Shown here: positions 34,644 to 55,700 of the stretch, one piece after another | Position numbering within the stretch: position 1 is the first letter of the stretch | Layout of the letters: the number at the start of each line of letters is the position of its first letter | NCBI RefSeq assembly: GCF_963921235.1 | Contig: NC_086109.1 | Location: forward strand, 76,818,001 to 76,882,000 | From: Mobula hypostoma | Lineage: Eukaryota | Reading direction: 5' to 3' | DNA length: 64,000 bases | Notes under the pieces: generated by a model | Databases searched by the model: none | The model's input: the letters and a program-made list of their open reading frames with translations, nothing else | Told to the model about the DNA's origin: nothing | Position numbers and translations under genes: made by a program

Positions 34644-34769
34644 ATGGCTGTGCCCTTCAAAAAGGATCTGGAGAAATATAAAGATATTGATGAGGATGAA
34701 CTTCTTGGCAAACTGAGTGAGGAGGAATTGAAGCAGCTGGAAAATACCCTTGAGGAACTGGATCCAGAG
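34644..34769 (+). CDS. TMOD3: Tropomodulin first coding exon (tropomyosin-binding site 1)
   Basis: ATG at 34644; [42 protein letters not shown]; donor GAG|GTGGGA; probable acceptor ttttcttggcag| at 34572. Confidence 0.95.
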
Positions 34770-37700
34770 GTGGGATTGGAATTTTTGACATTTTCCATTG
34801 CATGTTTGGGCCTTGTGACTCTTCAGAAATAAAGCTAAACGTTTTTGGAAAGAAAAAATTTGTGATCTTTCATTATCAGAAATTTCTTTTGAACGACAAT
34901 GCAAGCCATGTTTGAACTACTGCATAAAGTTTTACAATTGGGTACTGAAGGGCTACAAGTTGTGCATTGTGATGCTAAAACAAGCTTGTTACTGGAGAGG
35001 AGTGTTTTTTAATTTAATTTGCATTGCATTTGTTCCCATTCTGTCACTGACCTATGGAAGCCACCTGATTTCCACATCTTTCCAAATGAGTTTTCACACA
35101 TTGTATTTGTGATTTTAAAAAAATTCAGAGCATTATGTGCGCACCTCCATCATATAGGTTATAGATGAGTACCAAGTAACTTCTTTAGTCTGTTTATACA
35201 TTTAACTTGATCACCTTCCAAAATTCTGCTCCTTCCATCAAATGTCCACACTTAGTTGCAGCTTTTGGTCCTTTTCATTTCGTCAGTGTCCAAGGGATTT
35301 GTACTGTTATGGAATGAATTTAAATTAGTTTGGTGGAGGAAGAATATAATGTAACTCACCCTAAAGTGTTAAATGAGCCTTAAATAAGTTGAGAAGCTTG
35401 GAGGCTTGGGGAAGTAAACTCAAGGTTTACAGTGTAAAATGTTTCATTTGTTCATGAGGGAACTACAAATAGCAATATAATGTTTGAAATTGTTGTGGGG
35501 AGCTGCAATGAGGAAAACTTCACCTGCCAATGATATGCTTATGTAGAAGTGTCATAAGGCACATGGTCCTTAAAATGCTTAATCCTTAAACACTTCTTTC
35601 TTAATGTAAAGGTGATCGGTAAACAATGGATAGCTCTATTGGATAAACAGTTACAAATTGATTGTGGACTAAATGAACTTGTGTTATCAATTGTTAACTG
35701 ACTGGCTTATCTGGCTATTGTATCAGGCTAGCACTGCACATCATCAAAAACTGTGAAGCATGGTGGCAGAGAGAGACAGACACCCCAACACCCCTTGGGA
35801 TTCCAGAATCCTATGTGCCAAGGATTTGTCAGGGCCCTACCTGGCTCTCATGATCTCTCCCCGAATCCTTTTCTGGTGTTATATTTCTCAAGGGATCAGT
35901 TTGATTATCTTTTCGTAAATTTCATTCTGCTTTCTTTTACCTTAACTAAATTCTTCCTCTCTCATCAAAGGTTCCTTTACCTTGCTATCTAATACAGCTG
36001 TGATATTGTTCCTGATTAGTATTACAACTCCTCCCCTTTATATCTATCACATCTGAAACATCCAAACCTTGAAATAGTTAAGCAGATATTTCTGCCCCTG
36101 CTCAAACAAGTCTTGCATCGTTCCTTGCATAGATCTGTGCTCTGTTCTTAGCTCATAAATAACACTTCAATTAAAATAAGCACATTTAACTTTTATGTCT
36201 AGTATGTACATTGCCTGTTCTTAGACTTGCTGGTCCTGATATCTACCTTTCCTTCAATTTTTTTCAGTTTCTAATGTTCTGGTTCCCATTCTCCTCCCCA
36301 CCAAATTAATTTAAACGCTTCTGAGCAGTGCTGGTGTGCCTCACTGCTAGAATATTTGTTGTGCTTGTTGCCTTTGTTGAAGTTACCCCAGCCTCATGTT
36401 TTTCAACCATGTATTGATCTGTGGTATCCTTCTATTCCTGTTCTCATTAGCACATAACACAAAGAGTAATCTGGAGATTCCCACCCTTATTCCTGTTTTT
36501 CAGACTCCTTCCTAACTCTGTAGGCATTTTCCCTATTCTCAGCATCACATTGCATTAAAGTAAGGTTGGTGTGAGAACATTAAGTTATAGGAGAGCAGAT
36601 ATCCTGATGTTTCTTACTCTGAAAGTTAGAGATAGGATTGGGAGGATGCTAAAGGAGTTGAGCAAAGAGTGGATAGAATTGTTCATAACCTAACAGTCAC
36701 CAAAATTTAAAAGCTGAAGTTTCTGATCTTCTCTGAATGTTGTTTGGCTTATATACATGTATTTTGTTTAGACTTGTAAAATATTATTTTCTCTGCCACT
36801 TTAGCATGCACTCCTGCCAGCAGGCTATCGTCAGAAGGACCAGACTCTTAAATCCCCAACAGGCCCCTTTAATAGAGAACAGCTTCTCTTATTCTTGGAG
36901 AAAGAGGCCTTGGAATACAAAGATAGAGAAGATTTTGTGCCTTTCACTGGAGAGAAAAAAGGTACAGTGCTCAACTTGAGTTCAGACTTGCACATTTTTT
37001 TGCATGTTTGCATCTTTGCGGGATTTAAGGAAAGATTTAAGTTTTTAACTTTTCCAATCTTGTGCCTGTAAATTAAGCATAGACACTAGAGCAAGCTCAA
37101 GAATTTTATTTAATCTTATTAGAATATTCAAATCCTCCCTTGTGAACTTTAAAAATTTGAATGTCAAATTTCAGCATATTTAGAAACTAAAAATCATGTT
37201 CTGTGAATTTTTGCTTTACAATATTGTTAGAATTAACATCTTAAAGAATTCAATCCTTAAGGTTTGCTCTTTATTTTAAATGTTGAAATGTAGGCATTTG
37301 TATTTTATTAAGACAAAGAACCCCTGTGTAGTTCCTGCTGCAAATCAAGCATAATTATTGATTAACGAAAACATACTTGAGTACATAATATTCAAATGAG
37401 AGGGTTTTGATACACTCCTGTTATGCATCAGGCATGCTAATTACAGTATATAGATGTGTTGTAATTGAGGAAAATGTTTTTAAAAGGATAATGGGCCTGA
37501 GGTGGTTAATCCTCATTTAGGATTTTTTTTAATGTTGGCAGCAGTTTGGGGTTGTCTTAGCTTTTGGATGAGTTTGTGCAGAAGTAGATCTAACATTGAG
37601 CAATTGGGAATTGCCAGAGAACTGCATATTTAATTTAAATGCATATTTTATGCTCTTCCAAGTAATTGACTGTAGAATAGCACTGGCATTTCCAACCAGT

Positions 37701-40700
37701 AGCATTGCCAGATATGCCTGCTGTTGAGAGTAGCCTTCCCATGACAGTAGTCTGTTCTTGTATACAAGTATACAGCAAGCAATCTTTATAGACTTCTATT
37801 TCAGGGCTTTGAAATAAATGCCTTAATGAAAACCAAATATTTATCATGTACTGTCTTTTAAAAAAATATCTAAACAGGATGAAAACCATGTTTATTTACA
37901 ATTGCAGGCTGTGCTAAGCTTTGTTTCTTAAGTACCAACTTAATTTCTAAAGTTAATAAAGAAAAGACTTTTTTTCTCATGTGAATTTTGATGCAAGTAA
38001 TAACTAACCTTCCTAAACTCATTTCATAATTCTCTTCAAAAGAATTTTGCTAGGATGATTGAGGCTTTAAGACACTGGTCAGACCACATTTAGAGTATTG
38101 CCAACAGTTTTAGGCCCCATATCTCAAAAGATGTGCTCTCATTGGAGAGAGTCCAGAGGAGGTTCACGAGGACGATTCTGGGAATGAAGGGGTTAACATT
38201 TGAGTAGCGTTTGGCAGCTTTGGGTCAGTACTCACTGGAAATTAGAAGAATACGGGAGAATCTCATTGAAACGTACCGAATGTTGAAAGGATTAGATAGT
38301 TTGGATGTGGAGAGGATATTTCCTCTGGTGGGAGTATCTAGAACTGGAGGGCACAGCCTCAAAATTGAGGGGTGACCTTGTAGAACAGAGGTAAGGAGGG
38401 ATTTTCTTAGCTAGAGTATAGCAAATTTGTGGAATGCTCTGCAACAGACTGCGGTGGAGGCAAAGTCCGTGGGTATATTTAAGGTGGAAGTTGATAGTTT
38501 CCTGATTAGTCAGGGCATCAAAGGTTATGGTGAGCAGGCAGGTGTATGGGGTTGAGTGGCATCCAGGGTCAGCCATGATGGAATGGCGGAGCAGACTCGA
38601 TGGGCTGAATGGCCTCACTAGGCTCTTGTGTCTTATGGATCAGGCATTTGATTCTTTTTTTCATGCTTTTTAAAAATGTATTATTATGCTAGAATGTTAA
38701 GAAGGAAGAAAATCTTGTCTTTAATAACAAATCCTTCTGCATAATTCTATATTCCTTAAGTAAAAAAGTGCATCTAAACATTAACTTTAGCTGTATTTTT
38801 AATATAAATGAATGTTACTTGAAGTACAAGTCAGTTAAAAATGCTTTGCGACCACTTAGATTTTACTTTAGTTCCCAGTGCTTTCCTAACTGTAGAATAT
38901 AAATTACATTTACAAATAGTTCAATGGCTAACATGCAAGAATACAAATTGTAAAATATAAAACACACTGCTGATTCCTGCACTGCCCTATTTTTGCCATT
39001 CATTACCAAATCCTAGTAATCAGTGTGATGACCTATTAAGAACTTCACTACTTTGAGATCCTGTAATTTGCAGTCAACAGATTAGCAGTATTTAATGTTA
39101 GATTTTTTTTTGAGCTAGCTTAAACTTCTAATTACTGCAAGAATAAATCTCTAAATCTGAAGCCAGGGATTGAAAAAAATCCAAAACAATTTAGATTTTA
39201 TTACCTGTAAGTAGCTCTTTACTAAGCTTACATTACCTGGGTAGAACTGCTGGAATCATGTCCTGCAGCTTACAAAATCACAATTTATGCTGAGTTTTTG
39301 CTCTAATAAACTAATTAAAATTCCAGGGTTTCCTTAAACATTTTAATATTTAAAAAAAACCCAGAAGCAACCATGTACTTTAGTATTGCACCCTTGTGAT
39401 GCTTACTCGAGTTTATGCAACCTGAAAGAAATGAAACAGAACTTCTATATTTTTCTAACCATTTAATTAGTACTCTTGTACCAAAATGAATTAGACTGAG
39501 TATTAATATTTGGATGGTATGTAAAACATGCCTGCCCTCACAAGGTCAATGCATGGCATATAATTCTTTTTTGCAGCTTGTAAAATTCTTGGGTAACCAA
39601 TCTAGTTCCTATATAAGCCAGAGACTTGATGCCTAATTGCACAAATGAAGACTAGTGAAAGAGGTGGTATGATTTTAGAATTCTTAACTTTGCATGATCA
39701 CAGTCCAAAAATTCTAAAGCTCTAACATGGAGCATATGGGTAGAGGTTGCGCTATTGCATCTGATTGGTCCTATTCTCACACTACTCATCCTCTTGCTCT
39801 TTACTTGTAGAATGCCTTGGGTTTTCTTCTTAATCTTGCTTGCCAAGGCCTTCCATAGTCCCTTCTAGCTCTCCTAATTTCATTCTTAAACTCCTTGGCA
39901 ATCTTGTAATTTTCTAGAACTCTACCAATACCTAGCTGCTTGAACTTAAGCTTTTCTTAACTAGATTTTCCACATCCTTCGTACATTTTTTTTTCTTTAC
40001 CCTACCATCCCTTCCCTGCCTCAATGGAACCTGACTATGCAGAATACCATGCAAGTATTCCGTGAACATTTGCCATATTTCTGTTCTGCATTTCCCTGAG
40101 AGTATCTGCTCCCAAGTTCCTTTCTAATAATATGATATTCCCTCCCACCCCAACTAAATGTTTCCCATATTGTCTGCTGCTGTCCCTCTCCAGTGTTATG
40201 GTGAAGGAGATAGTTTTGTGATCGCTACCTCCAAAATGCTCTCCTACCGAGCGATCTGACACCTGAGCAGGTTAATTTCCCAATACCAGATCAAGTACAG
40301 CCTCTCCTCTAGTTGGCTTATCTACATATTGCATCAGGAAACCTTTCTGAACACACTTAACAAACTCTACCCCATCTAAAAGCCTTGCTCTAAGGAGATG
40401 TCAGTCAATATTAGGAAAGTTAAAATCTCCCATCACAACAACCCTATTATTGCACTGTTCCAGAATTCGTCTCCCTATCTGTTCTTATTTCCCTGTACAA
40501 CTGGGGGTCTATAAAAGAAACACTCAGAGTTATTGCCCCCTTGTTTCTGACTTCCACCCACACTGACTCAGTATATAATCCCTCCATGACTTCCTCCTTT
40601 TCTGCAACCGTGACACTATCCCTGATGAGCAATGCCATGCCCCACCTCTTTTGCCTCCCTCCCTGTCTTTTGAAGCATCTAAAGTTTGGCATACTCCGCA

Positions 40701-43700
40701 GCCATTCCTGCCCCTGAGGCATCCAAGTCTCTGTAATGGCCATAACGTCATAGTTCCACATATTGATCCACCCATCTGCATTTGTTTATAATACTCTCAA
40801 ACCATTAGATTGAGTCTGTCTTTGCTCTCTCGTCTGCCTATACTTCCTCACAAACTTCCTACAAGCTACCTCTAATTGTGTGCCAACTGCCCCATCCTCT
40901 GCCTCTTCACTTTGATTCCCATCCCCTGCAAATCCAGTTTACAGCCTCCCCAATAGCATTAGCAAACCTTCCTGCCAGGATATTGGTTCCCCTGGGATTC
41001 GGGTGCAACCCATCCTTTTTGTACAGGTCACACCTGCCCCAAAAGAGATCTCAATGATCCAGAAATCTGAATCCCTGACCCCTGATCCAATCCTTCAATC
41101 ACGCATTTATCCTCCACCTTATTCTATTCCTATACTCACTGTTGTGTGGCACAGGCAGCAATCCTGATATTACTACCCTTGAGGTCCTGCTTCTCAGCTT
41201 CCTTCCTAACTCCCTGTATTCTGCTTTCAGAACCTCCTCCCTCTTTCTGCCTTTGTTGGTACCAATATGTACCATGACCTCTGGCTGCTCACCCTCCCAT
41301 TTCAGGATATTGTGGATGCATTCAGAAACATCATGAATCTTGGCACCTGGGAGGCATACTACCTTCTGTGTTGCTTTTTTGCGTCCACAGAATCGCCTAT
41401 CGGTCCACCTAACTACTGAGTTTCCTACTACTGCTGCCATCATCTTCCATTCCCTATCCTTATGAGCCACAGGGCCAGATTCAGTGCCAGAGGCACGGCC
41501 ACTGTTGCTTCCCCCAGGTAAGTTGTATCTCCACCCCTCTCCTCCTCCTCCTCCTCCCCCCCTCCCCCCCAGCAGTATTCAAAATGGAGTACTTATTGCT
41601 AAGGGGGACAGCCACAGGGGTGCTCTTCCTTCCCTCTCCTGACAGTCACCCACATATCTGTCTCCTGTAACTCCTGTCAATCACCTCACTTTCCCTAACA
41701 AGCCGAAGGTCATCGAGCTGCAGCTCAAGTTCCCTAACTCGGTCTCTAAAGAGCTGCAGCATGATGCACCTGGCACAGATGTGGCCATCAAGGAGGCGTG
41801 GAAGTCTCCCAGATATCCCACATCTGACACCCAGAACAGAAAACTGGCCTTGCAGTTATACCCACTATTCTTTAAGTTAGAGGAAAAAGAGATATGAAAG
41901 CAACTTACCTCACCGAAGCCCCAATGAGCTAAAGCCCTACCTACTATCTTGCACTATTCCAATTGTTCCACTAGGCAGTGTCTCCCTTTTATCCCGGAAC
42001 CTTCTCAGAGGCCTTGCACGATGACTAGCTACTGCGTCTGCGCACTTCTCCCAATCGAATCTCCCTGGTGGTTGGATTCTTCCATTTTCCGAGTTATTTC
42101 TTCTTGGGGGCCCTTGGCTCCCAGTGGAGTGTAAGCCATCGACGACCTCCCATGTCCATCGTCCTCTGTGAGCCAGTGTCTCATGAGTGGACCAGGAGTG
42201 TCCGCATTGTCTAATTTTGGCCTCGATGTCTCTCCTCCATATGTTCTTTGGACATCCTTTTTTCCTCTTTCCTTGGGGATTCCACTTCAATGCCTTTCTG
42301 GTGATGATGGTTGACTTCCTTGAGATGTGGCCAATTCACCTCCACTTCTGTTTGTGTATTTATATCTGTATGGATTTCTGGTTGGTGTTTTGCCACAGTG
42401 TCTGGTTGGTTACTTTGTGCATGTGATTTCTATGATCTTTCTCAGGCACTGGTTGATGAAAGCCTGGAATTTCTTTGTAGTGTCTTTGTTCTCCAGGTTT
42501 CAGAGCCTTATAGGAGCACCGTTTTAACATTTGAGTTGAAGATTCTGATTTTGGTTTTCCTTTATATGACTGGATGTTCATACTTCAAGATGTTGAAGAC
42601 TACCCTGGCCTTGACATCCTCATCTGTTCCACTGCTCTCAATGCCTCCAAGATGAAGAAAATCACTTTCAGGGTTGTGTCTCTCATCACTGTGGGTCTGT
42701 TGCTGGTGCAGTTTATCTTCATCACTTTTGTTTTATCTGTACTGGGTCTTAGATTCAGCATGGTGGAGTTACCAGTCAAGAGTGTTGATTTCTCTAGCAT
42801 CTGTTGGTCAGAGCTAGTCAGTAGGTCCTATGTCGTCTGCAAACTCTAGGTCATCAAGTTGCTGCCACATAGTCCACTGGATTCCTTTTCATTTTTCACT
42901 TATTGTCTGTTTCATAATCTAGTGTATTGCCAACAGGAAAGGAGCAATCAAACATCCCTGCTTCACCCCGGTGAAGCTTTCTGACAGTTTTCCCACATGT
43001 ATGACTTTGCATGACATGTAGGAGTTCCTGATGTATTGATAAATTTCTGTGATATTTTATGTTTCATAATTTTCCATAGGGTGTTTCTGTCTAAGCTGTC
43101 AAGACTTTCTCATAGTTGAAGAAGTTGACATAGAGGGAATTATTCCATTTGATTGACTGTTCTATGATTATTAAGGTAGTTGCCTGGTCTGTGCAGGAGC
43201 AATCTTCCCTAAAGCCTGCTTATAGCTCCCTTAATGTTTTGTCAAAGCTTATTGAAGGTGTTGCAGAATAATTCTGTTTAGCATCTTTCGGACTATAGAC
43301 ATTAAGGATGTACCTCTGTAGTTTTTAGCTTTGTAAGTCACCTTTATTTGGAAACTTGATTATGTGACTTTGCTTCCACTCTTGTGGCATCTTTGTCCCA
43401 GATGTTGCAGAACAAAGTATATAGGATATCAGCCTTCAATGCCTCTGATGGTACACTGGGCCAGCTGCTTTTCCTGACTTTAGCCTCCTGTTTGCCTGTA
43501 TGATTTCCTCCTTTTATGGCTTGGCACAGTTGACAGCCAAGTCTGGGGCTTCTGGAATTAAATGAGATTCTGCAGGAGGTGCTCTGTTGAGAAGCTCATT
43601 GAAGTACTGTGCTCAACGTTGGAACTGTTTGTCTTTAGTTAGAACATTTCTATCGTTAAGCTTCACTTGGGTGTTGATCTGGTTGAATTTGCCAGCTAGT

Positions 43701-46700
43701 TTCTTGGTAGTGTCATATAGTTTCATATTCCTGTTTGCTGAGGCTTCTTCCACTTGGGACGCAAGTGTGTTGATGTATCCTCTCCTATCCCTCTTGGATT
43801 TTTCTCCTTTCCTGTGCACTCTGAATCATTTAGTTGCATCTAAAGTTTTGTAGACTGTTTGGTTTAATTGCAATATGCAGTAATTTAAATCATCTGGTTG
43901 TGGGATTTGAGTGCATAAGCAGATAGACTAATACCATACTGAGGGAATGCTGCATTGTTTTAAGTACTCCTTTGGAGATCTCAGGCCATTAAATGTGCCT
44001 GATCAAGTAGATCTAAAAGGCTCCATTTAATGAACAGAAGTTTTGAAGGTGATTTTAAGTTGGCCAGTATGGACTTGACCAGTAAAGTGTTGACCAACTC
44101 CTTAATCTGAAATACTGCAGGGTATAAATTGGCTTCATTATTTACCTCTGTAGCTTCAGTGATAGCATTACTCATTTGCTTTGATGTTTTTAGACTATCT
44201 TTCTAATTACGGATCCAACTCTGGCTCAAGAATGATTCCTTGACTCCAAGAAATGCTGTGTAATATAACGCACCTTGACTTTGAAAACCACTGGGCTAGA
44301 TTAAAACATAGTTTATTAATAGCCCTGACTATTCAGGAGTGCTAAAACAATCTTTTAATTGTAGTCTTCAGTGTTTGTTATTTGCACCCTTTCCAAGCAC
44401 AGCTTCAGTGTTAATTCCTTAATTTTCTCCTGCTTTATGAAATTTTCTATCTCTTCATAGTGTGAAATACTCCTAATGTCATTTTATAATCTCAATTTCT
44501 CCATTAACTTTACCTTTTTTTTGGGCCATGTATTCAATATCAAAATTGTGAAGCAATTTTTAACAAATGGATAGTTGTTTGAAATCTAGGTTTAAATAAT
44601 ACACATATTACTTAAATGAAAGATTAAGAGCTTCGAAGTTTGACCTACTGTAGCTGATTGGAAGCATTTTTTGTACAGTATGGTTTTCTCCATTGGAATA
44701 TAACGAAAATGTAGATTTACCTAATGAATGTGTATATAGAAAAATGAAGGAATAGATGCATTCTGCATGATGCATGAGCTATCCGTTGGAATTGTTGCTG
44801 TTTACCTTGGCCAGATATACTTTATATTAGTGCATATTTTTTAGTTATTGTTGCACAGCCTGTCCCTTGTATTTTAAACTTAATATTTCCATCAAAAATA
44901 GTTCCTATTTCAAAAACTGCAATGTTTACTATTGACTGTTTTTTGCTTTTGCTGGCTTTTCTAATTTGCTAACCAGTACTCTCTGCTGCTCATCCTAATG
45001 CCAACCACAGGAGCAGCAGCAGCGGCCACTACTTCAGGTGAGAGATCCCTCAGTAGAAACTTTGCTTCCATTCAGTTTTCTTTTGAAATCATATGCATTA
45101 GCACACATCAATGTGTGTGTAATAGCAAAAAGTCGGGTTGTGTCATGCATTCCATTTTGATTTCCACCTCATTTGTGCTCATTGACCTCATTGCAGATGT
45201 TAATGGCTTGATACAAGCAAAATAGTGATGCAAGAGTTTACTGATTTTTTAAAAATTTAAGCACATTGTTAACAGCTGTATAAAATTTAATTTTCCTGTG
45301 ATTATCATTTGAAGTAGCTGATGGTTTTGTACTTTGGATTAATTGGTATTTACAGTTACCAGACTGAAATTATCTTCAGTTAATGCAGAATATTCTGTTT
45401 GATTTTGGAGCCTGTTCTGTGTCCTCATCTTATTTCCCTAAAGTTTAAGGGATTGTTGTTGGTATGTGTAAAGTTTTCTAAATTGATTTTCCTCTGCTTT
45501 TATTTTCTTAGTCCATAACCTTTCATGCCATAACTTTATCACTGTTTTTGTTTTGGTGTGTGGTATCTAATCTAACATTAAATTGGAAATGTGATATAAT
45601 TTTGATGTCTCATTTACCCATAACTTAATTTTGCAATTGCAGTTTGCTTTACACTAAGTTCCAAATGTCTTGTTAACATGGAACGGTTGCCATAAATGTC
45701 TTTTCAATATAATATAGTATTGAATTGAAACTATCCTTTCATTTTAGTTTGCAAGTATATTAGCTTTGGGTTGTAGGATAAATGCTTCTAGCAATAATTA
45801 TGAAACTTAAAGTAGCATTGGATTTGAAATAAATATAAGGTCTGATTATAATAGCTATTCTGCATTGCTGGCAAAAGTAGTATTTCACCCCTCAAGAACT
45901 GGTTTCTTACTAGTACCTCACTTTAAATTTGATTTCAATTAATGGCAATGCCATTGGTTGTAAATTGGTGCCAATGGTTCTTGCTAAATTGTGAACAAAT
46001 TGAGGCATCGATATATTTTTACACACTTGAGTTGAGGATTCCAATGCAACCATTGAAGTCTTCGTGCTATGCAGTAGTTGGTCTATGATAGTTTTTGTCA
46101 GATGAATAAATTCTTAATGGTTGACGTGTAGGCTTTATAAGGTTAAAATTTGGATTGTATTTATTCAGCTAATTTTCAGAGTGTGAACTGCCAAGCATTT
46201 TTTCAAAACAACATTCAGAATTGGAGGAAATAGTAAGATTTCGAAGAGATTTTTAGCAGTGAGGAAGCAACTAGAACCCGGACATCCCACCTCTCCCGGA
46301 AGTTCCGGGAGTCTCCCGCATATCGATAGTGGCTCCCTGATGCCCAGAAATTATATACAATATCCCGGAAATAGATTTTTTTTGAGAGGGAGAGGGACAG
46401 CGAACATCCTGATTGGTCTCTCTTCGTGCTAAGAGTGGTCCCCAACCACCGGGCCGTGAGGAAACAATATGATTTGGCGATATGAAACGATATGAGTCAT
46501 TTGCACCTTTCCTCATTACCTGTCACGCACTGTTGAACTTGAACGCACGCGAGGTCATTACGCACGTGTCATCTATGTCACCGCGGGAAGGAGATCAACT
46601 CGAGCTTGTAAATGACGACGGGCTGAGAAGTATGGTTGACATAACATCTCTGCTGGCATTCTGAATCAAAGTCAAGGTGAAATATCCCGAGATAGCCACA

Positions 46701-49700
46701 AAAGCACTGAAAACGTTGCTTCCATTTCCAACATCATATTGCTGCGAAGTGGAGTTTTCCGCAATGAATGCAACAAAAACTAAATTACGGCATAGACTGG
46801 ATCCTCCTTCAAGTATCGCTGTCTCCCATCACCCCTCGATGGGACCGTCTTGTTGCTGGAAAACAAGCCCAGGGCTCGCACTGATTCAGCGATATTGGTG
46901 TGTTGCAATGATTTTATATGTTCATACGGGGAAAACATGCGCTGTGTGTTTAATAGCCAAACGTTACTTAAAATGTTATGATGCTATTGACTTATCACCT
47001 ATATTCCGGTCGTGATTAATACCCCCCCCCCCCCCCCCCGCTGGTTGGCCGGTCCGCAAGAATATAAGAATATTGTCAATATTGAGCCAGTCTGCGGTGC
47101 AAAAAATGTTGGGGACCCCTGCTACATAGACCTATCAGTTTTCTCTGTGGGCGGGCTTTATAGTCGACCTCAAAAATAATGACAGTGTTGCTTGCTGCAG
47201 TTTGCAACAGTAACTTTTCTATTGCCCATGGTGGGTTAAAATGTAAAAGACATGTTGAGGTGAGTTTAACAGGTGTCATTACAGCATAGCTAATGTTATT
47301 TAAACTAGCTGGCTAGCTGCTAAGGAGCTACGCTATTGATGTCCTACATGATGAAGCCAAACTCCCTGTAGACCTGCTTAAAGTTGTAATAGAATAAACA
47401 TGATATAAGTACATATTTTAATATCACATTTGCTGCATATACCCAACTTGGTTTACAGATTAGATAAAATCACTAATCAAAGTATTACATACACCCTTGG
47501 AGGTCGGGGGGGGGGGCGGGGTGCTACCTCCCTGAAATGGCGGTGATACCTCCCTGAAATGAGTTTTTGCAGGGTAGGATGTCTGAGAACCTGTATCATG
47601 GATGCTGACTTGATTTAGTGGTTATTTATCCAGGTTATTTTGAGTTGCTAATGAGTATAAAATTTTTGTTCATGATCTAAAAGTTTGTTCAATGTGCTGA
47701 GCATCTGAAAAACTGGAATTATTCACGCAAGCATTTGCAAGCAGACCAGGCAGGTAACTAGTCAACCTTTCTGCTGAAGTTGCTTATTGACTCCAGTATT
47801 TGGCTTATATTTTGCTTTACTAAAGATCAAACTAATATTAATCTATTCTTTATCCAAATGATGCACACTTCACAGTAATCAAACTCTACTGCCTTGGTAT
47901 ATTGTATAACTTTACCAATTGCCAAGTAGCACAGGTTCAAAAGTAGTTTTTTTAATCAGGTTACTGAATAGACAACCTGTTTGTATATTTTAATCTGATT
48001 TTGCTCTGCGTTTTGTTCTCCAAAACTGCTAATGGATTTTGCTTTTTTAACTGAGCCACTTGAGCCTGTTCAATTTGTACCATGTTTTGCAATTGCAAAA
48101 TCAGTAATTTGAACTTCTTGACAGTAGTAAACTGTTTTAAATATACTCATTCACCATGGTCATGTGGGGGGGAGGGGGAAGTGGTCTGGTGTATACTCTG
48201 ACCCTTCCAATGCTAATGCACCACTTTTATCCAGAAAACCATTTAGTTAAAATGCTTCAGAGATTGATAAAGCTACATTTATTGACAGTGTGGTCTACGG
48301 GGGAAAAAAACTATTTGGTTTTCTTCAGTAAACATGAGGAACTCTGCCAATGCTGGAAATTCAAGCAACATACATCAAAGTTGCTGGTGAACGCAGCAGG
48401 CCAGGCAGCATCTGTCTTGACGAAGGGTCTCGGCCCGAAGCGTCGACTGTACCTCTTCATAGAGATGCTGCCTGGCCTGCTGTGTTCACCAGCAACTTTG
48501 TGTGTTGCTTGGTTTTCTTCAGTGTATCTTTTAAATGTTAAAATGAGTGTTGAGGGAAGAATGGCGAGTTTATTGCTTCTATCCATGTATTACATTAGAA
48601 AGTTGTAAATGATGCCGGCTGTAAATCTATAGTTGCCACATCACTGTACTGTTTGACAAATGGGCATTTATACCTAATTCTTGAATGTGATGTAGAATTA
48701 ATTGATCTAGATATTGCATTAATTAGATATTTATTCTTTTGATAACATGAGTTTACTCATTAGTATTAAAGTCTATCGTCTGGAAATGATTTGGTATCAA
48801 TTTTTGTAGTTACTGCATCAAGGGATAGTTGGGTAAAATATCAAGCTACAGATGGAAAATATGCCAATTTTTACTGAAGATTTTGCATTTTTATTCTCTT
48901 GCAACCAAATGTAATTTAATGTGTTGCAGAAATTGTTCAGTTAAAAAAAAATGAAGAGATACTTGTTTATACAGTTAGCTGGCTGTGTAGTTACAGTGAA
49001 AGAGTATTGCTTATTAAGAAGATAGTTTTGAAGAGCGCAAACCTATCAATCATGGCTGTCAGAATAAACACTGAGACTTGGAAAGCGCGTTAAATTTGTT
49101 TGAAGTACATGTAAATGATTTTGCACTTCTAAGTAACATACCATGAAACCTGTAACCAGAGGTAAATAAACTTATGAAGTGCAAATAATGAAGCAACCCT
49201 TCACCAGTCTGCCCATGTGACAAGCCATCTGCTGCATGAAGATTTTTAATTCCTTGAATTTTGTATTTTTCTCTTATAGAATGTAGTGTAGCAAATGTTT
49301 CATTCTATGGTATAAGAATAATATAAAGCATCTCTAATACCTGTGCCATGAAGGGCAAAGGAATACTGTCAGGTTCGCTAATAATATGATAGAGAAAGTT
49401 GGTCTTTTCTACTGCCATTTTTGGGTCCTTGATTTCCCTCTATCCAACATTGGAAGTACCTGTATCAAGCACTGTAAGAGTTCAGGATAGAGGTCCACCA
49501 GCACCAACATAAGAGCAAATAGGGATGCATAATGTTGGACTTGCATCTGTAGATAATGGAACCTCATGATCTGTCAGTAAGCCACAATGGTGATCATCCT
49601 CAAATTGACAGATTGCTAATCCCCTTTTGTTACATTTTGCAGCTTGTTAGATTTATTATTTCCCGGCAATATTCTTCATTTTGTTTGCTAATTGTTTAAA

Positions 49701-52700
49701 TAGCCAGCTTTGAGACAGGCATTATTCATTACTGAAGAATGTTTTCAATTAATAGCCTGGTTCTGAGTTTTTAAACTAAGTGGAATTGCTGGCATATTGA
49801 GTCAAGCCAAGATGTCTCCTAAACCTGCACTTCTGAGTCTTATGAAATGCATTGCACTCAGTTTCAGCTCTTTAAACAATGTAATAGCATATTGTAAGCA
49901 TGAGTAATCTCCAAATTTATGCTAAACTAAGTACAGCTCTGCAGTTGCCATTTCAGGATATTTTCAGTGACCTGGTGCAGAATTTCTGCTGCATTTGGAA
50001 TTGCAATTGTACCTTGGTGTTCAGTTGAATTTCAAAATACTTGTATGCATCTAAAAGGTAATATGAAATAGGTGGAATGTTGGAATATAACTTACAAATA
50101 ATTTGTTACAGGGAAATTATGGAAGCCCAAGCAGAAACCTGTGGAGCAGCATGTGGAAGAGAAAGTAATTTTGGATCCAGAACTGGAAGAAGCTTTGACC
50201 AGTGCATCAGATACTGAGCTCTGTGATCTTGCAGGTAACATATCTAGAGTGAACTTCAGTACATTGCTAGGTTTTGTTTTTGTCCTTGGTCGGCAATGGA
50301 GGGGGAACTATGTAAGACAAAAATTCTGTTTTATCCACAATCTCGTTTGGTTCTAATTGTAAATTACCAATGGATGTAATTCCTATCCAACTTCTGAGAT
50401 ATTTTACAGTATTATGGAGTTTTCAGTGAGCCAGATGAGTTTAAAGCGTGCATTGGAAAACAAAATCTAGTGAGTTTGGAGGGAGTATGGATAACCACAT
50501 CTGGTAAACCAGTTGCCATGCCAATCATTCAGATGCAGGATTATCAGAGATGCAATGTATTTCATAAATTACATCATCCGTTTAGTGCTGAAGTTAATAT
50601 AATAATGCCTAAACTAACAATCAGGAGATTTGTGTTCAAATCCTGCCATGGCTGCTACAGAAATTAAATTGTTAAATTTGGCTAATCAATTAAAAAGCCC
50701 TTCATGAGTAATGTCCACAGAAGTACTAGAAATGTAAACATGAGGAAATCTGCAGATGCTGGAAATTCAAGCAACACACACAAAGTGCTGGTGGAACGCA
50801 GCAGGCCAGGCAGATCTATAGGAAGAAGTACAATCGACGTTTCGGGCCGAGACCCTTCGTCCTGATGCTGCCTGGCCTGCTGCGTTCCACCAGCATTTAG
50901 TGCTAGAAATGTGTTAAATTTATTCACTGTGGCCTATGGGGTTCATGGCCCATCACTATGGTTGACTCGTGCCTTCTGAAATGCCTGAAAAAGCCATTCA
51001 ATTCAATGGTAATTAGTATTCCATTAAATCTTGGATGTCTGTACTAATTACTGAGCAACATGGAGTGCACTATTACTGAATGCATTGTAGCACAAGTGGT
51101 CATCATGTAGCCTTTCCAATGAACTTCAGTGAAATGTTATATGTATTAACTGCTCAGCATCCAGTGCCACAGTACTTGAATGTTTATCCCTACCAGATTC
51201 TTACTAGCTATCCTACAGTTACAAGTATTTCTAGTGGGCAAGAGTTGGGGAGATGAATTCAGACAGAAACAAGACAAAATGACCCTAACTAGAGATGTGA
51301 ACGAAGCATCTATGCTTCTCTTAGAAATGAGTTATGTTCCAAGTGGTAGAGTAAATAGGATAAATCAATGACATGCGGTAACAGCTCAATCAAAAATCTA
51401 TAATGTGTAATATCGCAGAAGTAGAATAGGAATTACATCCATTGATAATTTAAAGTCTCAGAATGTAGTCTGTATTCAAACTGTTTAAACTGTTCATAAT
51501 TGTATCAAATTTTAGGATGTCAATGTATTATCTTTTTGATTTCTTTTCCCCCATGCACATTTTGGAAACTTGATTACTGAAACTACAATCATGTAATACT
51601 TCATTGTTGCATAGCAGTGACTTCACATTACTAATGACTTCCTAGCAAAGAGTGAATTCTAGAAACCTGTTACTTTAAAGTAATGATAGCCAATTACATT
51701 TGGGTGTTCTGTTTCAAATTGTATTTTGAAATCCATATTTTGTGCACCTTGGATATACAAAATTATGATGAATTAAATGAAGGTAAGCCATCTGTTCCAT
51801 ACTTTAGTATTATACTTGTTACTGACAATAATTAATTTGGTTTCAGTATGCTTTTTTTTAAGCTTCTATCGCTTATTTTAAAATTGACTTGAGGCAAATG
51901 TTCGAAAGGTTATCGAACCTGTCAAAAATTTTTTAATGCAGTGTTTCTCAATTCCAGCTATTCTCGGAATGCACAATTTGAGCAACACACATTACTGTGA
52001 TTCAGTTGGTGGAAACAAGGGTTTGAACAGTAAGTTGGAGAACATCAATAATATCTAAAATTGTTTCTCAATTGATTTGTCCCATATTTCTTGAAGAAAC
52101 CATGGACTTCATGTTGAAACAGCATGCTGATTTAATTATGTATTAAAGAAATTTGTTCTTTTATATAACAGACATTTCTGCAGTATTGGGACATAAAGCC
52201 TTTGGAACCTATTCTACCATTCAATCCAGCCATGGAAGATCTGAGCTTGGCCTTATTCTACTTTCCTACCTAGTTTCCTCATAACTGATGACTGTCATTA
52301 GACCAAACTCAGGTTTCAATATATATTAAGTGATACAGTCCTCAGAGGAAAATTACTAATTTCAGTCTTATTCTGAAGCTATGCCCTCTTGGTTCTACAT
52401 TTTCCCCCATGAGGGAAATTCACTCCGCATCTACCTTTGTCAACCCCAAAACTGAATTTCATTCTTCGAAACTTCCAATGTATAGGCATAGACAGTTCGG
52501 TTCTTCAGCTGCATGCTAAGAGTCTTTGATTTGCTTTGAATGATAGTATATATCTGCAATTAAAGATGGTAAATGTAGTCTTGCCAAAGACCTGATCACT
52601 TTAAAGTCTTCCATTGTACTCAGTCTTCCTTACAATGAAGACCCACATTGTATTTATCTTTTGAATAATTTGCTGTACCTCTGAAATGTCAGATCCAGAT

Positions 52701-55700
52701 TTTACCCAGATTTTGCAGTCTTCTAGTCTAAGCCATACTCTGCTTTTCTGTTCTTCCTGCCAGAGTGTATTTAACTCATTTGCCAGACTTTAATAATCTG
52801 TCTAAATTTGAAATTCCATGTCTTTTGTAGTTTGCTTTCCCATCTATCTTTTCGTTAGCAAATTCTGCTATATATTTGGTCACTCCATTCAAGTCATTAG
52901 TATATAGTTAATATAGATTGACATTTCTTAATTCACAGCAATTCTATCACTGCTAAGCTTTTAACTGTCAGTAATTCACTGACTTTGTGCAGCACTTGTT
53001 ATTACAGGATGACCTGTTTGGTCACTGTAACACCTGTACCAGGTGTTCTGCACATTGAAAATTTTCCTGTGTGCCACCTAGATTTTCATTAAGTTCTGAT
53101 TACTCTCCCAAATTGCTCTATTATTTTCGTATTTCACTTAACCTGAAGTTGAACCAAACTGGAGGTGTTTATTGTTGTGGACTTTGTTTAATGCTGTAGC
53201 AATTGAGCAGGCCAAGTGGCTTCCATGGAGAGTGAAACAGTTATCTGACTGACAATACACACACAATGCTGGAGGAACTCAGCAGGCCAGGCAGCATCTA
53301 TGGAAAAGAGTAAACAGTCAACATTTTGGGCCGAGACTCTTCCTCAGGACTTTTTTTTTCCATAGATGCTGCCTGGTCTGCTGAGTTCCTCCAATATTAC
53401 TCTGATTTCCAGCAACTACTGATTTTTTTTTTGTGTGATCTGACTGGCAATGACTTTTTGTTGGAATAATTTCCAGCATCTACAATTTTTGTTTACTTTT
53501 TATTATTGCACATGAGAATAGTCTGGTTTACTAGAATAACTTTTGTTTAGTAATTCACTTAAGATGTTTTCAACTTTGCACACAAAGTGAAAATAGTACT
53601 GACTTCATTGAAGTAAGCCATAAACCAGCTTCAGTTGCAATCTTGCATTGACTTGATACCTGCATATTGCTGTCTGAAGCAATACTTCATTCAGATTGCA
53701 ATGCTTAAAATGCATTGTGGAAGAGTAATTTTCCTTGCATAAAGCAATACCTTTGAACATTTTAAAGAGCTCAGGATAATCGGTGACAGATGCATTTGAC
53801 TTCCTTTGATTGGTTCCTTCCAGATGTTGTCAAAGGTGAGAAGGTCAAACCTGTTATGGACGAACCTCCCAACCCGACAAATGTAGAAGAAAGTTTACAG
53901 CGAATAAGAGCCAATGATCCTGGACTTGTGGAGGTTAATCTGAATAATATTAAGGTAGGAGGCAGTGGTGTTGAATATTGTATTTTTATTTGAAAAATAC
54001 ATTTGTATTTAAATCCTCTATTTACAATAACATTTATAAGCTATTCTAAGCTATAGGCTGGTAAAATACTTCCATTTAATTTAAATTGTCATCTGTACTT
54101 TTAGAAACCTAACAGAAGTACTCCTCTGCCATGTTTTGTATATTGTCTGCAGTCAAGGCTCTTGTTCTTTCTAGCTAAATGACAACCTTTTCAGCTTCAA
54201 GGGGTTAGCTCTGAGATTGTAGCAAATGGACTGGTATGGCATCAAATCAGTGCCTTGATTGAGGAGCTTTTCCAAGTGTTCCTTCCACGGATTGATGCAA
54301 ACCTTTTGCTTATTTAAGCTTACGTGACACTCATTGATTGTTAATGGATCTCAGTGCTTTGTACCTTTTGTAGTGTTGTTAAGACCAGATAAAGTATCCA
54401 TGCGCAAGTTATCTATGCACTTTTTGGACCTATGTTTTGTGATTAGAAATTTTTTAAAATTTCACTTTGTTTATTGCTGTATCTCATGGGCGTTCTCATT
54501 AACTAGTTTTAGACATAGTCATACTTTATTAATCCCCGGGGAAATTGGTTTTCGTTACAGTTGCTTCATAAGTAATAAATAGTAATAGAACCATAAATAG
54601 TTAAATAGTAATATGTAAATTATGCCAGTAAATTATGAAATAAGTCCAGGACCAGCCTATTGGCTCAGGATGTCTGACCCTCCAAGGGAGGAGTTGTAAA
54701 GTTTGATGACCACAGGCAGGAATGACTTCCTATGATGCTCAGTGCTGCATCTCGGTGGAATGAGTCTCTGGCTGAATGTACTCCTGTGCCCACCCAGTAC
54801 ATTATGTAGTGAATGGGAGACATTGACCAAGATGGCATGCAACTTGGACAGCATCCTCTTTTCAGACACCACCGTGAGAGAGTCCAGTTCCATCCCCTCA
54901 ACATCACTGGCCTTACGAATGAGTTTGTTGATTCTGTTGGTGTCTGCCACCCTCAGCCTGCTGCCCCAGCACACAACAGCAAACATGATAGCACTGGCCA
55001 CCATAGACTCGTAGAACATCTTCAGCATCGTCTGGCAGATGTTAAAGGATAGTGTTCATGGTAGGAAAAACCAGGGTCTCTTCAGAACCTTCAATTCTGC
55101 AATAAGCTCATGATCTAAAAGTGGCCCTTTTCTCCACCCACATGTCTTCGAACACAAATGCAACTACAATAGGTACACTGAGACACTTGAAAAACTGTCT
55201 TAACACTCCTTGCAAAATCCTCCAAATGCAATAATTTACCTACCATGTCAATGCTGCTGCCTTTTCCTAAACCAATATTCCAAACTTCAAGATTGGATGG
55301 CTTTCAAGAACATCATCTGTATGTTTGATCCCAGACTCTAGAACTGAGCCTTGCATCTAGCTCCAACATGAAAAGTCATTTCTAGAAGAACAAAGCATTT
55401 CAAATCAGATTTATCTCCTTAGTGGGAAGTAATATCGACGAAGGGTCTCGGCCCAAAACGTCGACTGTACCTCTTCCTAGAGATGCTGCCTGGCCTGCTG
55501 CATTCACCGGCAACTTTGTGTGGTGTTTGAATTTCCAGCATCTGCAGATTTCCTGGTGTCCTTGTTGACCTACCTGGTTCATGATTACTCAGTGTAGAAG
55601 GACACTTCTGTAGGATTTCCTGATGGTAGTATTCTAGACCCAACCATCTTCATGAATGTCATTAATGACCTTCATTTGCTAGATCAGAAATATCTTTGAC

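What the first reader, a model, noticed from the sequence alone, without database searches (positions are those of the whole stretch)
44940..45200. Candidate regulated 27-nt microexon inserting into tropomodulin actin-binding site 1
Seen: in TE-free intron 3 sequence lies cctaatgccaaccacag|GAGCAGCAGCAGCGGCCACTACTTCAG|gtgaga. It is exactly 27 nt and phase 1-1, so it turns ...GEKK-GKLW into ...[16 protein letters not shown]. Upstream are six YGCY/UGC motifs (44944-45002, the last one about 10 nt before the AG) and tandem UGCAUG (44764, 44771). Downstream are eight YCAY, six of them within 45143-45191. Established: UGC near the 3' splice site marks SRRM3/4-dependent neural microexons; downstream YCAY clusters are Nova enhancers; YGCY binds MBNL; UGCAUG binds Rbfox; the TGEKxGK segment belongs to Tmod actin-binding site 1. 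Inference: a tissue-specific, probably neural, isoform with altered pointed-end capping that gene predictors would miss.
Basis: partly seen in the sequence, partly recalled or inferred. Interest (0 to 1): 0.82.

Follow-up and report, generated by a model that had tools for sequence, protein, structure and literature searches.

The report
Real, already-annotated tropomodulin microexon
The 27-base segment is a genuine alternative mini-exon of a ray tropomodulin gene, conserved in sharks, rays and chimaeras and already present in public gene models, so it is real but not a new discovery, and its tissue pattern is still untested.

Summary
At 45011-45037 lies a 27-nt, phase 1-1, AG...GT segment in intron 3 of a tropomodulin gene. 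One slip: the insert is nine residues (GAAAAATTS), not eight.

It is a real alternative microexon. My assembled inclusion isoform (344 aa) is an exact prefix of RefSeq XP_062922049.1, tropomodulin-2 isoform X1 of Mobula hypostoma. Models with the same-site +8/9-residue insert exist for at least nine other cartilaginous fishes, including Callorhinchus. A skate transcript contig splices exon 3, a 24-nt microexon and exon 4 exactly at the predicted junctions.

The exon, a CTAAC branch-point candidate at -39/-40, a CUCUCUGCUGCUC block, a proximal UGC and the GTGAGA donor are conserved in five other shark and ray genomes. This matches the published SRRM3/4 microexon architecture. The downstream YCAY (Nova) cluster is not conserved. 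GCAUG motifs are conserved, but only upstream.

"Gene predictors would miss it" is wrong. Neural specificity could not be tested, because my single read-laying run was rejected. I found no counterpart in bony-vertebrate TMOD2/3 proteins, in the Amia intron or in a paralog of this genome.

Verdict: already annotated, not described in the papers I could search, moderately interesting.

The parts
45011..45037 (+). Alternative 27-nt cassette microexon, phase 1-1, adding GAAAAATTS between GEKK and GKLW.
   Evidence: Searches give the sequence and frame; the inclusion isoform is an exact prefix of RefSeq XP_062922049.1; 24-nt orthologues are intact in five other shark and ray genomes; the skate orthologue is spliced in an assembled transcript.
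44968..44973 (+). GCTAAC, candidate branch point; the A at 44972 lies 38 nt before the G of the acceptor AG.
   Evidence: CTAAC lies at -39/-40 in all six species. Its use as the branch point is inferred, not shown.
44979..44991 (+). CTCTCTGCTGCTC: a pyrimidine tract carrying two UGC, the candidate bipartite intronic enhancer (UCUCUC plus UGC).
   Evidence: Invariant in all six species. It matches the UCU_CUC[N1-50]_UGC enhancer described for SRRM3/4 microexons.
44999..45010 (+). Proximal UGC (44999-45001) and the acceptor ...CCAACCACAG.
   Evidence: The UGC is kept in five of six species (Stegostoma reads CGC) and the acceptor is conserved in all. Across -45..-1, 35 of 45 columns are invariant.
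45038..45043 (+). Strong donor site, CAG|GTGAGA.
   Evidence: It scores above every constitutive exon of the gene on a rough position matrix. GTGAGA is invariant in six species.
44764..44776 (+). Two overlapping-spaced UGCAUG motifs in a conserved island about 240 nt upstream of the exon.
   Evidence: The 44771 copy aligns with TGCATG in five of six species. Each species has 2-4 GCATG within 300 nt upstream and none within 300 nt downstream.
45143..45191 (+). YCAY cluster (six in 52 nt) downstream of the exon; lineage-specific.
   Evidence: Present in the window but not conserved: 2-5 YCAY per 200 nt in Pristis, Amblyraja, Narcine and Stegostoma, near background.
36805..36961 (+).
   Evidence: Pfam PF03250 match.
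50112..50234 (+).
   Evidence: Pfam PF03250 match.
34644..60310 (+). Tropomodulin gene body within the window. Coding exons: 34644-34769, 36805-36961, 50112-50234, 51958-52029, 53824-53954, 57984-58091, 59483-59626, 60166-60310. The last coding exon was not found in the window.
   Evidence: The assembled 335 aa are identical to XP_062922051.1, Mobula hypostoma tropomodulin-2 isoform X2.

Best explanation
The segment is a genuine alternative cassette microexon of the single TMOD2/TMOD3-type tropomodulin gene of cartilaginous fishes. It is 27 nt in stingrays and devil rays and 24 nt in the other species examined. Inclusion adds 8-9 small residues (Gly/Ala/Thr/Ser) between the residues equivalent to Tmod1 R92 and G93, in the extended C-terminal part of actin-binding site 1 and just before the second tropomyosin-binding site.

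Shown: the exon exists, it is spliced into mRNA in a skate, both isoforms are annotated in many species, and the exon and its 3' splice-site region are under strong sequence constraint.

Inferred (about 55%): inclusion depends on an SRRM3/4-type enhancer made of a distal CTAAC branch point, a CUCUCU-UGCUGC tract, a proximal UGC and a strong donor, and is therefore enriched in neural tissue. The conserved upstream GCAUG motifs would then give Rbfox-type repression elsewhere.

Inferred (weaker): the insert acts as a flexible spacer that changes how ABS1 and the second tropomyosin-binding site engage the pointed end.
For: - My inclusion isoform (344 aa) is an exact prefix of RefSeq XP_062922049.1. 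The skipping form is 335/335 identical to XP_062922051.1.
- Same-site inserts are annotated in Hemitrygon, Pristis, Amblyraja, Rhinoraja, two Chiloscyllium species, Stegostoma, Scyliorhinus and Callorhinchus.
- Transcript contig SRR24105900_10738 aligns to the Amblyraja gene exon by exon and has a 24-nt block exactly at the predicted junctions.
- The orthologous exon is intact and in frame in Heptranchias and Narcine, where it is not annotated. It is the top-scoring frame-preserving candidate in intron 3 of all five other species.
- Across six species, 35 of 45 positions in -45..-1 are invariant, against about 10-20% in the flanks. CTAAC lies at -39/-40 in all six, CUCUCUGCUGCUC and GTGAGA are invariant, and the proximal UGC is kept in five of six.
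- This architecture matches the published description of SRRM3/4 microexons.
- In skates the skipping protein was seen on 87 contigs and each inclusion protein on 1. That fits restricted or minor inclusion.
- The insertion site maps inside the 4PKG ABS1 construct.
Against: - I obtained no read-level or tissue-resolved RNA evidence for this species; the one read-laying run was rejected.
- I cannot inspect what evidence supports the RefSeq X1 model.
- UGC/YGCY tracts also bind MBNL, and CU tracts bind PTBP1, so the motifs do not identify the regulator.
- The conserved GCAUG motifs lie upstream, which usually means repression, and Rbfox proteins are abundant in neurons as well as muscle.
- The Nova-type YCAY cluster is not conserved.
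- The branch point is only predicted.
- No functional data exist on the insert.
Confidence: 0.85

Rival explanations
1. It is a real conserved microexon, but its inclusion is not neural. It could be muscle- or heart-regulated, or broadly variable, and controlled mainly by Rbfox, MBNL or PTBP rather than SRRM3/4.
For: - Tropomodulins have major roles in muscle and the membrane skeleton (PMC4571291).
- YGCY clusters fit MBNL and CUCUCU fits PTBP1.
- GCAUG clusters are conserved upstream in all six species.
- No tissue data were obtained.
Against: - Short length, a strong donor, a distal branch point and UGCs between the pyrimidine tract and the AG are together the published signature of SRRM3/4-dependent microexons.
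- From my own knowledge, most conserved vertebrate microexons of 27 nt or less are neural.
Confidence: 0.3
2. It is a chance pseudo-exon: an AG...GT pair in frame that is never or only negligibly spliced.
For: On splice signals alone, 13% of simulated 13-kb introns contain a candidate as good, and a better-scoring one exists in the same intron.
Against: - A spliced transcript contains it in a skate.
- Isoforms with the insert are annotated in ten or more species.
- The exon, its frame and its splice sites are conserved from sevengill shark to devil ray, with a nearly invariant 45-nt upstream block.
- The better-scoring rival lies in a high-copy repeat.
Confidence: 0.01
3. It is spliced, but the protein insert has no function. 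The conservation would then reflect an RNA-level or regulatory element in the intron, and inclusion would be tolerated noise in a disordered linker.
For: - The first 12 nt of the exon are invariant even at synonymous sites, while the middle codons vary (A/T/I/S/G).
- The insert is low-complexity and lies in the N-terminal half that PMC4571291 and PMC7500696 describe as largely unstructured.
Against: - The frame and the absence of stops are kept in every species examined, and the length is 24 nt in all but the stingray lineage (27 nt, still a multiple of three).
- Residues stay small and uncharged.
- Both splice sites are maintained from chimaera to rays.
Confidence: 0.1

Closest known systems
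RefSeq model XP_062922049.1, tropomodulin-2 isoform X1 (Mobula hypostoma), and the equivalent X1/X3/X5 models in other cartilaginous fishes, plus UniProt V9KDT8 (Callorhinchus)
   Same: It is the same exon. The window's inclusion isoform is residue-for-residue identical over the 344 aa I could assemble, including GAAAAATTS. The other species carry 8-residue versions at the identical junction.
   Different: Nothing differs in sequence. These are automatic models with no description of regulation, conservation or function. In Hypanus sabinus, Mobula birostris, Heptranchias and Narcine only the skipping form is annotated, although the exon is intact in the two of those genomes I could read, Heptranchias and Narcine.
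SRRM3/4 (eMIC)-dependent neural microexons of vertebrates
   Same: Length of 27 nt or less, frame-preserving, a strong 5' splice site, branch point and pyrimidine tract set back from the AG, UCUCUC plus UGC elements in between, strong upstream intronic conservation, and location in a cytoskeletal protein's interaction segment.
   Different: Neural inclusion and SRRM4 dependence are untested here. The exon appears confined to cartilaginous fishes, whereas the classic programme is shared across vertebrates. No counterpart was seen in about 330 bony-vertebrate TMOD2/3 proteins or in the Amia intron.
Tetrapod TMOD2 (neuronal) and TMOD3 (ubiquitous) paralogues
   Same: They belong to the same gene lineage. 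In my tree the shark and ray gene lies outside a well-supported tetrapod TMOD2+TMOD3 clade that has Latimeria as sister (98/92 and 98/96 support), so it is a pro-orthologue of both.
   Different: Tetrapods have two genes and no insert at this site. Cartilaginous fishes have one gene of this type (only one found by the Pfam scan of the genome) with two splice forms.
Rbfox- and Nova-regulated cassette exons
   Same: (U)GCAUG clusters lie near the exon in all six species, and the window has a YCAY cluster.
   Different: The GCAUG motifs are all upstream, which is the repressive side on the usual position rule (my own knowledge). The YCAY cluster is not conserved.

Membership tests
Genuine alternative cassette microexon | Canonical AG/GT boundaries and a preserved reading frame | tested here: met
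   for the window; for five other species.
Genuine alternative cassette microexon | Found spliced into mRNA | tested here: met
   A skate transcript contig has the 24-nt block between exons 3 and 4 at the exact junctions. For the window's own species the only support is the RefSeq X1 model; read-level evidence was not obtained.
Genuine alternative cassette microexon | A skipping isoform also exists, so the exon is alternative rather than constitutive | tested here: met
   X1 and X2 pairs exist in Mobula, Hemitrygon, Pristis, Amblyraja, Rhinoraja, Stegostoma and Chiloscyllium. Skate transcript contigs of both forms are on record.
Genuine alternative cassette microexon | Conservation of the exon and its splice sites in related species | tested here: met
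   sharks and rays, genomic; Callorhinchus, protein.
SRRM3/4-dependent neural microexon | Length 3-27 nt with a strong 5' splice site | tested here: met
   The exon is 24-27 nt. CAG|GTGAGA is invariant and outscores the gene's constitutive donors.
SRRM3/4-dependent neural microexon | UGC between branch point and AG, with an upstream UCUC-type tract (the bipartite enhancer described in bioRxiv 10.1101/2024.09.17.613571) | tested here: met
   CUCUCUGCUGCUC lies at -32..-20 and a UGC at -12, downstream of CTAAC at -39. The tract is invariant and the -12 UGC is kept in five of six species. The branch point is predicted only.
SRRM3/4-dependent neural microexon | Inclusion enriched in neural (or endocrine pancreas) tissue | not testable with these tools
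   The single read-laying run was rejected by a filter, and run and tissue names are coded.
SRRM3/4-dependent neural microexon | Inclusion responds to SRRM3/4 | not testable with these tools
   This needs a minigene or knock-down experiment.
Nova-enhanced exon | A conserved YCAY cluster downstream of the exon | tested here: not met
   There are 8 YCAY in +1..+200 in the window, but 5, 4, 2 and 2 in Pristis, Amblyraja, Narcine and Stegostoma, which is near background.
Rbfox-regulated exon | Conserved (U)GCAUG within about 300 nt of the exon | tested here: met
   Each of six species has 2-4 GCATG upstream, in the top 1-6% of windows of its own intron, and none downstream. The direction and reality of any regulation were not tested.
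Tropomodulin (TMOD2/3 lineage) | Tropomodulin N-terminal domain plus an LRR cap domain, and orthology | tested here: met
   PF03250 matches on exons 2-4; 335/335 identity to RefSeq tropomodulin-2 of Mobula hypostoma; tree.
Insert lies in Tmod actin-binding site 1 | Position within the Tmod1 segment crystallised on actin | tested here: met
   The insert falls between Tmod1 R92 and G93. The 4PKG gelsolin-Tmod1 chimera aligns across the site to about residue 97. The 58-99 boundaries of ABS1 are from my memory of Rao et al. 2014, which I could not open.

The most novel reading that the evidence does not exclude
Cartilaginous fishes have a single TMOD2/3 gene. They may make a neuron-type pointed-end capper by splicing a lineage-specific, SRRM3/4-controlled microexon into actin-binding site 1, a microexon that predates the chimaera-shark split. 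That would achieve by splicing what tetrapods achieved by duplicating the gene into neuronal TMOD2 and ubiquitous TMOD3. The insert would retune the spacing between ABS1 and the second tropomyosin-binding site.
Probability: 0.2. Interest if true: 0.6.

Novelty: already known. Interest (0 to 1): 0.3.

Why it matters
The exon's existence is not new. It is already in RefSeq for a protein identical to the window's and for many relatives, so the scan gains no hidden gene product.

Three things are still worth noting:
- It is a clear example of a microexon conserved throughout cartilaginous fishes that seems absent from bony vertebrates. The well-known neural microexon programme is largely shared across vertebrates.
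- It lies in a structurally defined actin-contacting segment of a pointed-end capper, so its effect could be measured directly with existing capping and binding assays.
- The gene is the undivided counterpart of tetrapod TMOD2 and TMOD3. That makes a splicing-versus-duplication comparison testable.

I found no paper describing a tropomodulin microexon.

Tried and rejected
- **Read evidence.** I therefore have no read-level or tissue evidence. The runs are coded and mostly only guessed to be RNA.
- **Representative search.** A search with exon 3 returned mainly intron read-through fragments. It served only to obtain a full-length query.
- **Genomic DNA not obtained.** Look-ups failed for Mobula hypostoma (records of the window's genome are withheld), Hemitrygon and Cetorhinus (files too large) and Latimeria (not on record).
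- **Longer isoforms elsewhere.** The +7-residue TMOD3 X1 isoforms of reptiles and birds, and Latimeria X1, differ at the C-terminus rather than at this site. Odd inserts at the site in P0022 and P0213 look like prediction artefacts.
- **Paralog.** Intron 3 of the paralog on contig C59 of this genome has no similar exon.
- **Amia.** Intron 3 of Amia TMOD2 has no similar sequence or Ala-rich candidate.
- **Nova reading.** Rejected for lack of conservation.
- **Chance pseudo-exon.** Rejected.
- **Literature.** Searches for tropomodulin or Tmod2 with 'microexon', for SRR24105900, and for shark microexons found nothing relevant. Rao et al. 2014 could not be opened.
Full report
**1. Observation**

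The quoted sequence is at the stated place. An acceptor ...ccaaccacag is followed by a 27-nt segment at 45011-45037 and a donor gtgaga. Exon 3 ends at 36961 with one base of a Gly codon, and exon 4 begins at 50112 with the other two. Inclusion therefore keeps the frame.

The translation is [17 protein letters not shown].

- Six YGCY in 71 nt is matched by only 0.2% of equal-size windows in this intron.
- Six YCAY in 52 nt is matched by only 0.1%.
- Two UGCAUG in 311 nt is matched by about 4%.

The stretch 44800-45250 occurs once in the 3.48-Gb genome.

On splice signals alone the case is weak. With a rough position matrix the candidate ranks second of 478 open, frame-preserving AG...GT pairs in the 13,150-nt intron. 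About 13% of simulated introns contain one as good. The only better candidate (41473-41517) lies in a repeat with thousands of copies.

**2. What the gene is**

I assembled eight coding exons in the window. The 335-residue product is identical at every position to RefSeq XP_062922051.1, tropomodulin-2 isoform X2 of the devil ray Mobula hypostoma. Look-ups of that species' records were withheld as belonging to the window's genome or one very near it. The last coding exon was not found in the window.

A maximum-likelihood tree of 30 selected proteins places the shark and ray gene outside a well-supported tetrapod TMOD2+TMOD3 clade with Latimeria as its sister. The gene is therefore a pro-orthologue of both neuronal TMOD2 and ubiquitous TMOD3. 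The rows were my own selection from the search hits.

A Pfam scan of the whole genome found only one gene of this type, plus paralogs elsewhere. That count is a lower bound, because the tool scores only the best candidates.

**3. The microexon is real and already annotated**

Adding the 27-nt segment gives a 344-residue sequence that is an exact prefix of RefSeq XP_062922049.1, isoform X1 of the same species.

Proteins with an insert at exactly this junction are on record for many cartilaginous fishes:

| Species | Insert |
|---|---|
| Hemitrygon akajei | GAAAAATTS |
| Pristis pectinata | GAAAATTS |
| Amblyraja radiata, Rhinoraja longicauda | GAAAAITS |
| Chiloscyllium punctatum, C. plagiosum | GAAAATAS |
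| Stegostoma tigrinum | GAAAAAAS |
| Scyliorhinus canicula | GAAASSAS |
| Callorhinchus milii (UniProt V9KDT8) | GAAAGATS |

Each has a partner isoform without the insert. The exon is therefore alternative, not constitutive.

Direct transcript evidence comes from contig SRR24105900_10738. It encodes the 355-residue form and aligns at 98-99% identity to the Amblyraja gene in ten exon blocks. One block is 24 nt long and sits exactly at the predicted junctions.

In skates the skipping protein was recorded on 87 contigs and each inclusion protein on one. That fits inclusion being dominant in few samples, but it is only suggestive.

**4. Conservation and anatomy**

I fetched the orthologous genes of Pristis, Amblyraja, Stegostoma, Heptranchias and Narcine.

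In each, a 24-nt in-frame exon with an AG acceptor and a GTGAGA donor lies in intron 3. This includes Heptranchias and Narcine, where the exon is not annotated. In each it is the best-scoring frame-preserving candidate of the intron. The 27-nt length in the window reflects one extra GCN codon, shared with Hemitrygon.

In a six-species alignment, invariant columns are distributed as follows:
- -45..-1: 35 of 45
- the exon: 18 of 27
- +1..+8: 6 of 8
- further out: roughly 10-20%

The conserved block contains, in order:
- CTAAC at -39/-40, a near-consensus branch-point sequence;
- an invariant CUCUCUGCUGCUC;
- a UGC about 12 nt before the AG, kept in five of six species (Stegostoma reads CGC);
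- the acceptor.

A recent study describes SRRM3/4-dependent microexons in the same terms. They have a strong 5' splice site. Their strong branch-point and pyrimidine signals lie unusually far from the AG. In between sits a bipartite UCU_CUC[N1-50]_UGC enhancer. A UGC between branch point and AG was present in 74-79% of cases (bioRxiv 10.1101/2024.09.17.613571). The resemblance is close, but branch-point use and the identity of the regulator are inferences.

The other motif claims fare differently.
- The downstream YCAY cluster is not conserved. Pristis, Amblyraja, Narcine and Stegostoma have 5, 4, 2 and 2 YCAY in +1..+200, near background. The Nova reading has no comparative support.
- GCAUG is conserved as a cluster. 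Every species has 2-4 copies within 300 nt upstream, in the top 1-6% of its own intron, and none within 300 nt downstream.
- The upstream 300 nt forms an alignable island in which the copy at 44771 is shared by five of six species.
- From general knowledge of Rbfox position effects, upstream sites usually repress inclusion.

**5. Where the insert falls in the protein**

Aligned to solved structures, the insert lies between Tmod1 R92 and G93 (8F8T, 8IAH). It is inside the Tmod1 piece fused to gelsolin and crystallised on actin, whose alignment runs across the site to about residue 97 (4PKG/4PKH).

PMC4571291 describes ABS1 as a helix followed by an extended region running along actin subdomains 2 and 1 of the first subunit, and as critical for capping. 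The exact boundaries (residues 58-99) are from my memory of Rao et al. 2014, which I could not open.

A spacer of 8-9 small residues here could shift the downstream GKxW...PKQKP segment and the link to the second tropomyosin-binding site. This is inference only.

**6. Distribution**

None of about 330 TMOD2/3 proteins of bony vertebrates that I inspected has an insert at this junction, apart from two evident prediction artefacts. The set covers mammals, birds, reptiles, amphibians, coelacanth, bichir, sturgeon, bowfin and teleosts, including zebrafish.

Intron 3 of the Amia gene has no similar sequence. Intron 3 of a paralog in this genome has none either.

Within this sampling the exon is specific to cartilaginous fishes and predates the chimaera-elasmobranch split. 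Whether it arose there or was lost in bony vertebrates is open.

**7. What could not be done**

I therefore have no junction counts for this species and no tissue information. Neural specificity is unverified.

I put it at about 55%, on the strength of the architecture. I give about 30% to another tissue pattern (muscle or broad). The remainder goes to functionally neutral inclusion.

**8. Verdict**

The core interpretation (a real, regulated-looking microexon in ABS1) is supported. The Nova element is not supported, and the 'missed by predictors' claim is wrong.

Because the exon is already in public gene models for an identical protein and many relatives, I class it as already known. It appears undescribed in the literature I could search. 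It would make a tractable case for studying lineage-specific microexons and pointed-end capping.

Noticed in passing
window 41473-41517 (context 41350-41650): This is the best-scoring frame-preserving pseudo-exon of intron 3 (45 nt, stronger signals than the real microexon). It lies inside a roughly 280-bp repeat with thousands of genomic copies (2648 first-look candidates, 74-86% identity). It shows that splice scores alone mislead here.
   Followed up: partly
protein tree, (window gene 34644-60310): TMOD2 and TMOD3 of tetrapods group together, with Latimeria as sister. The TMOD2/TMOD3 duplication therefore looks tetrapod-specific, and the 'tropomodulin-2' of sharks, rays and ray-finned fishes is a pro-orthologue of both.
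   Followed up: partly
P0363 (RefSeq XP_062922052.1, isoform X3), corresponding to window exon 3, 36806-36961: This 304-residue model starts at an ATG inside exon 3, reads that exon in another frame (MHSCQQAIV...) and then continues in the normal frame from exon 4. It looks like an annotation artefact.
   Followed up: no
P0275/P0324 (Scyliorhinus canicula X2/X6), between the equivalents of window exons 4 and 5 (50235-51957): Catshark models carry a second alternative insert of 12 residues (DLKLDSKTTLRA) after ...CDLAA. A tblastn search of the window returned no hit for it.
   Followed up: partly
P0274, P0276, P0379 (shark 397-405 aa isoforms) and P0159-P0175 (reptile and bird TMOD3 X1, 359 aa); downstream of window 60310: An alternative C-terminal exon beginning VW... 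replaces VRKKR... in sharks and in sauropsid TMOD3. It may be an old alternative 3' end. I found neither terminal exon inside the window.
   Followed up: no
window 45011-45022 and the orthologous exons (alignment A1): The first 12 nt of the microexon (GAGCAGCAGCxG) are identical in all six species even at synonymous positions, while the middle codons vary. That suggests an RNA-level constraint such as an exonic enhancer.
   Followed up: no
I did not examine them.
   Followed up: no
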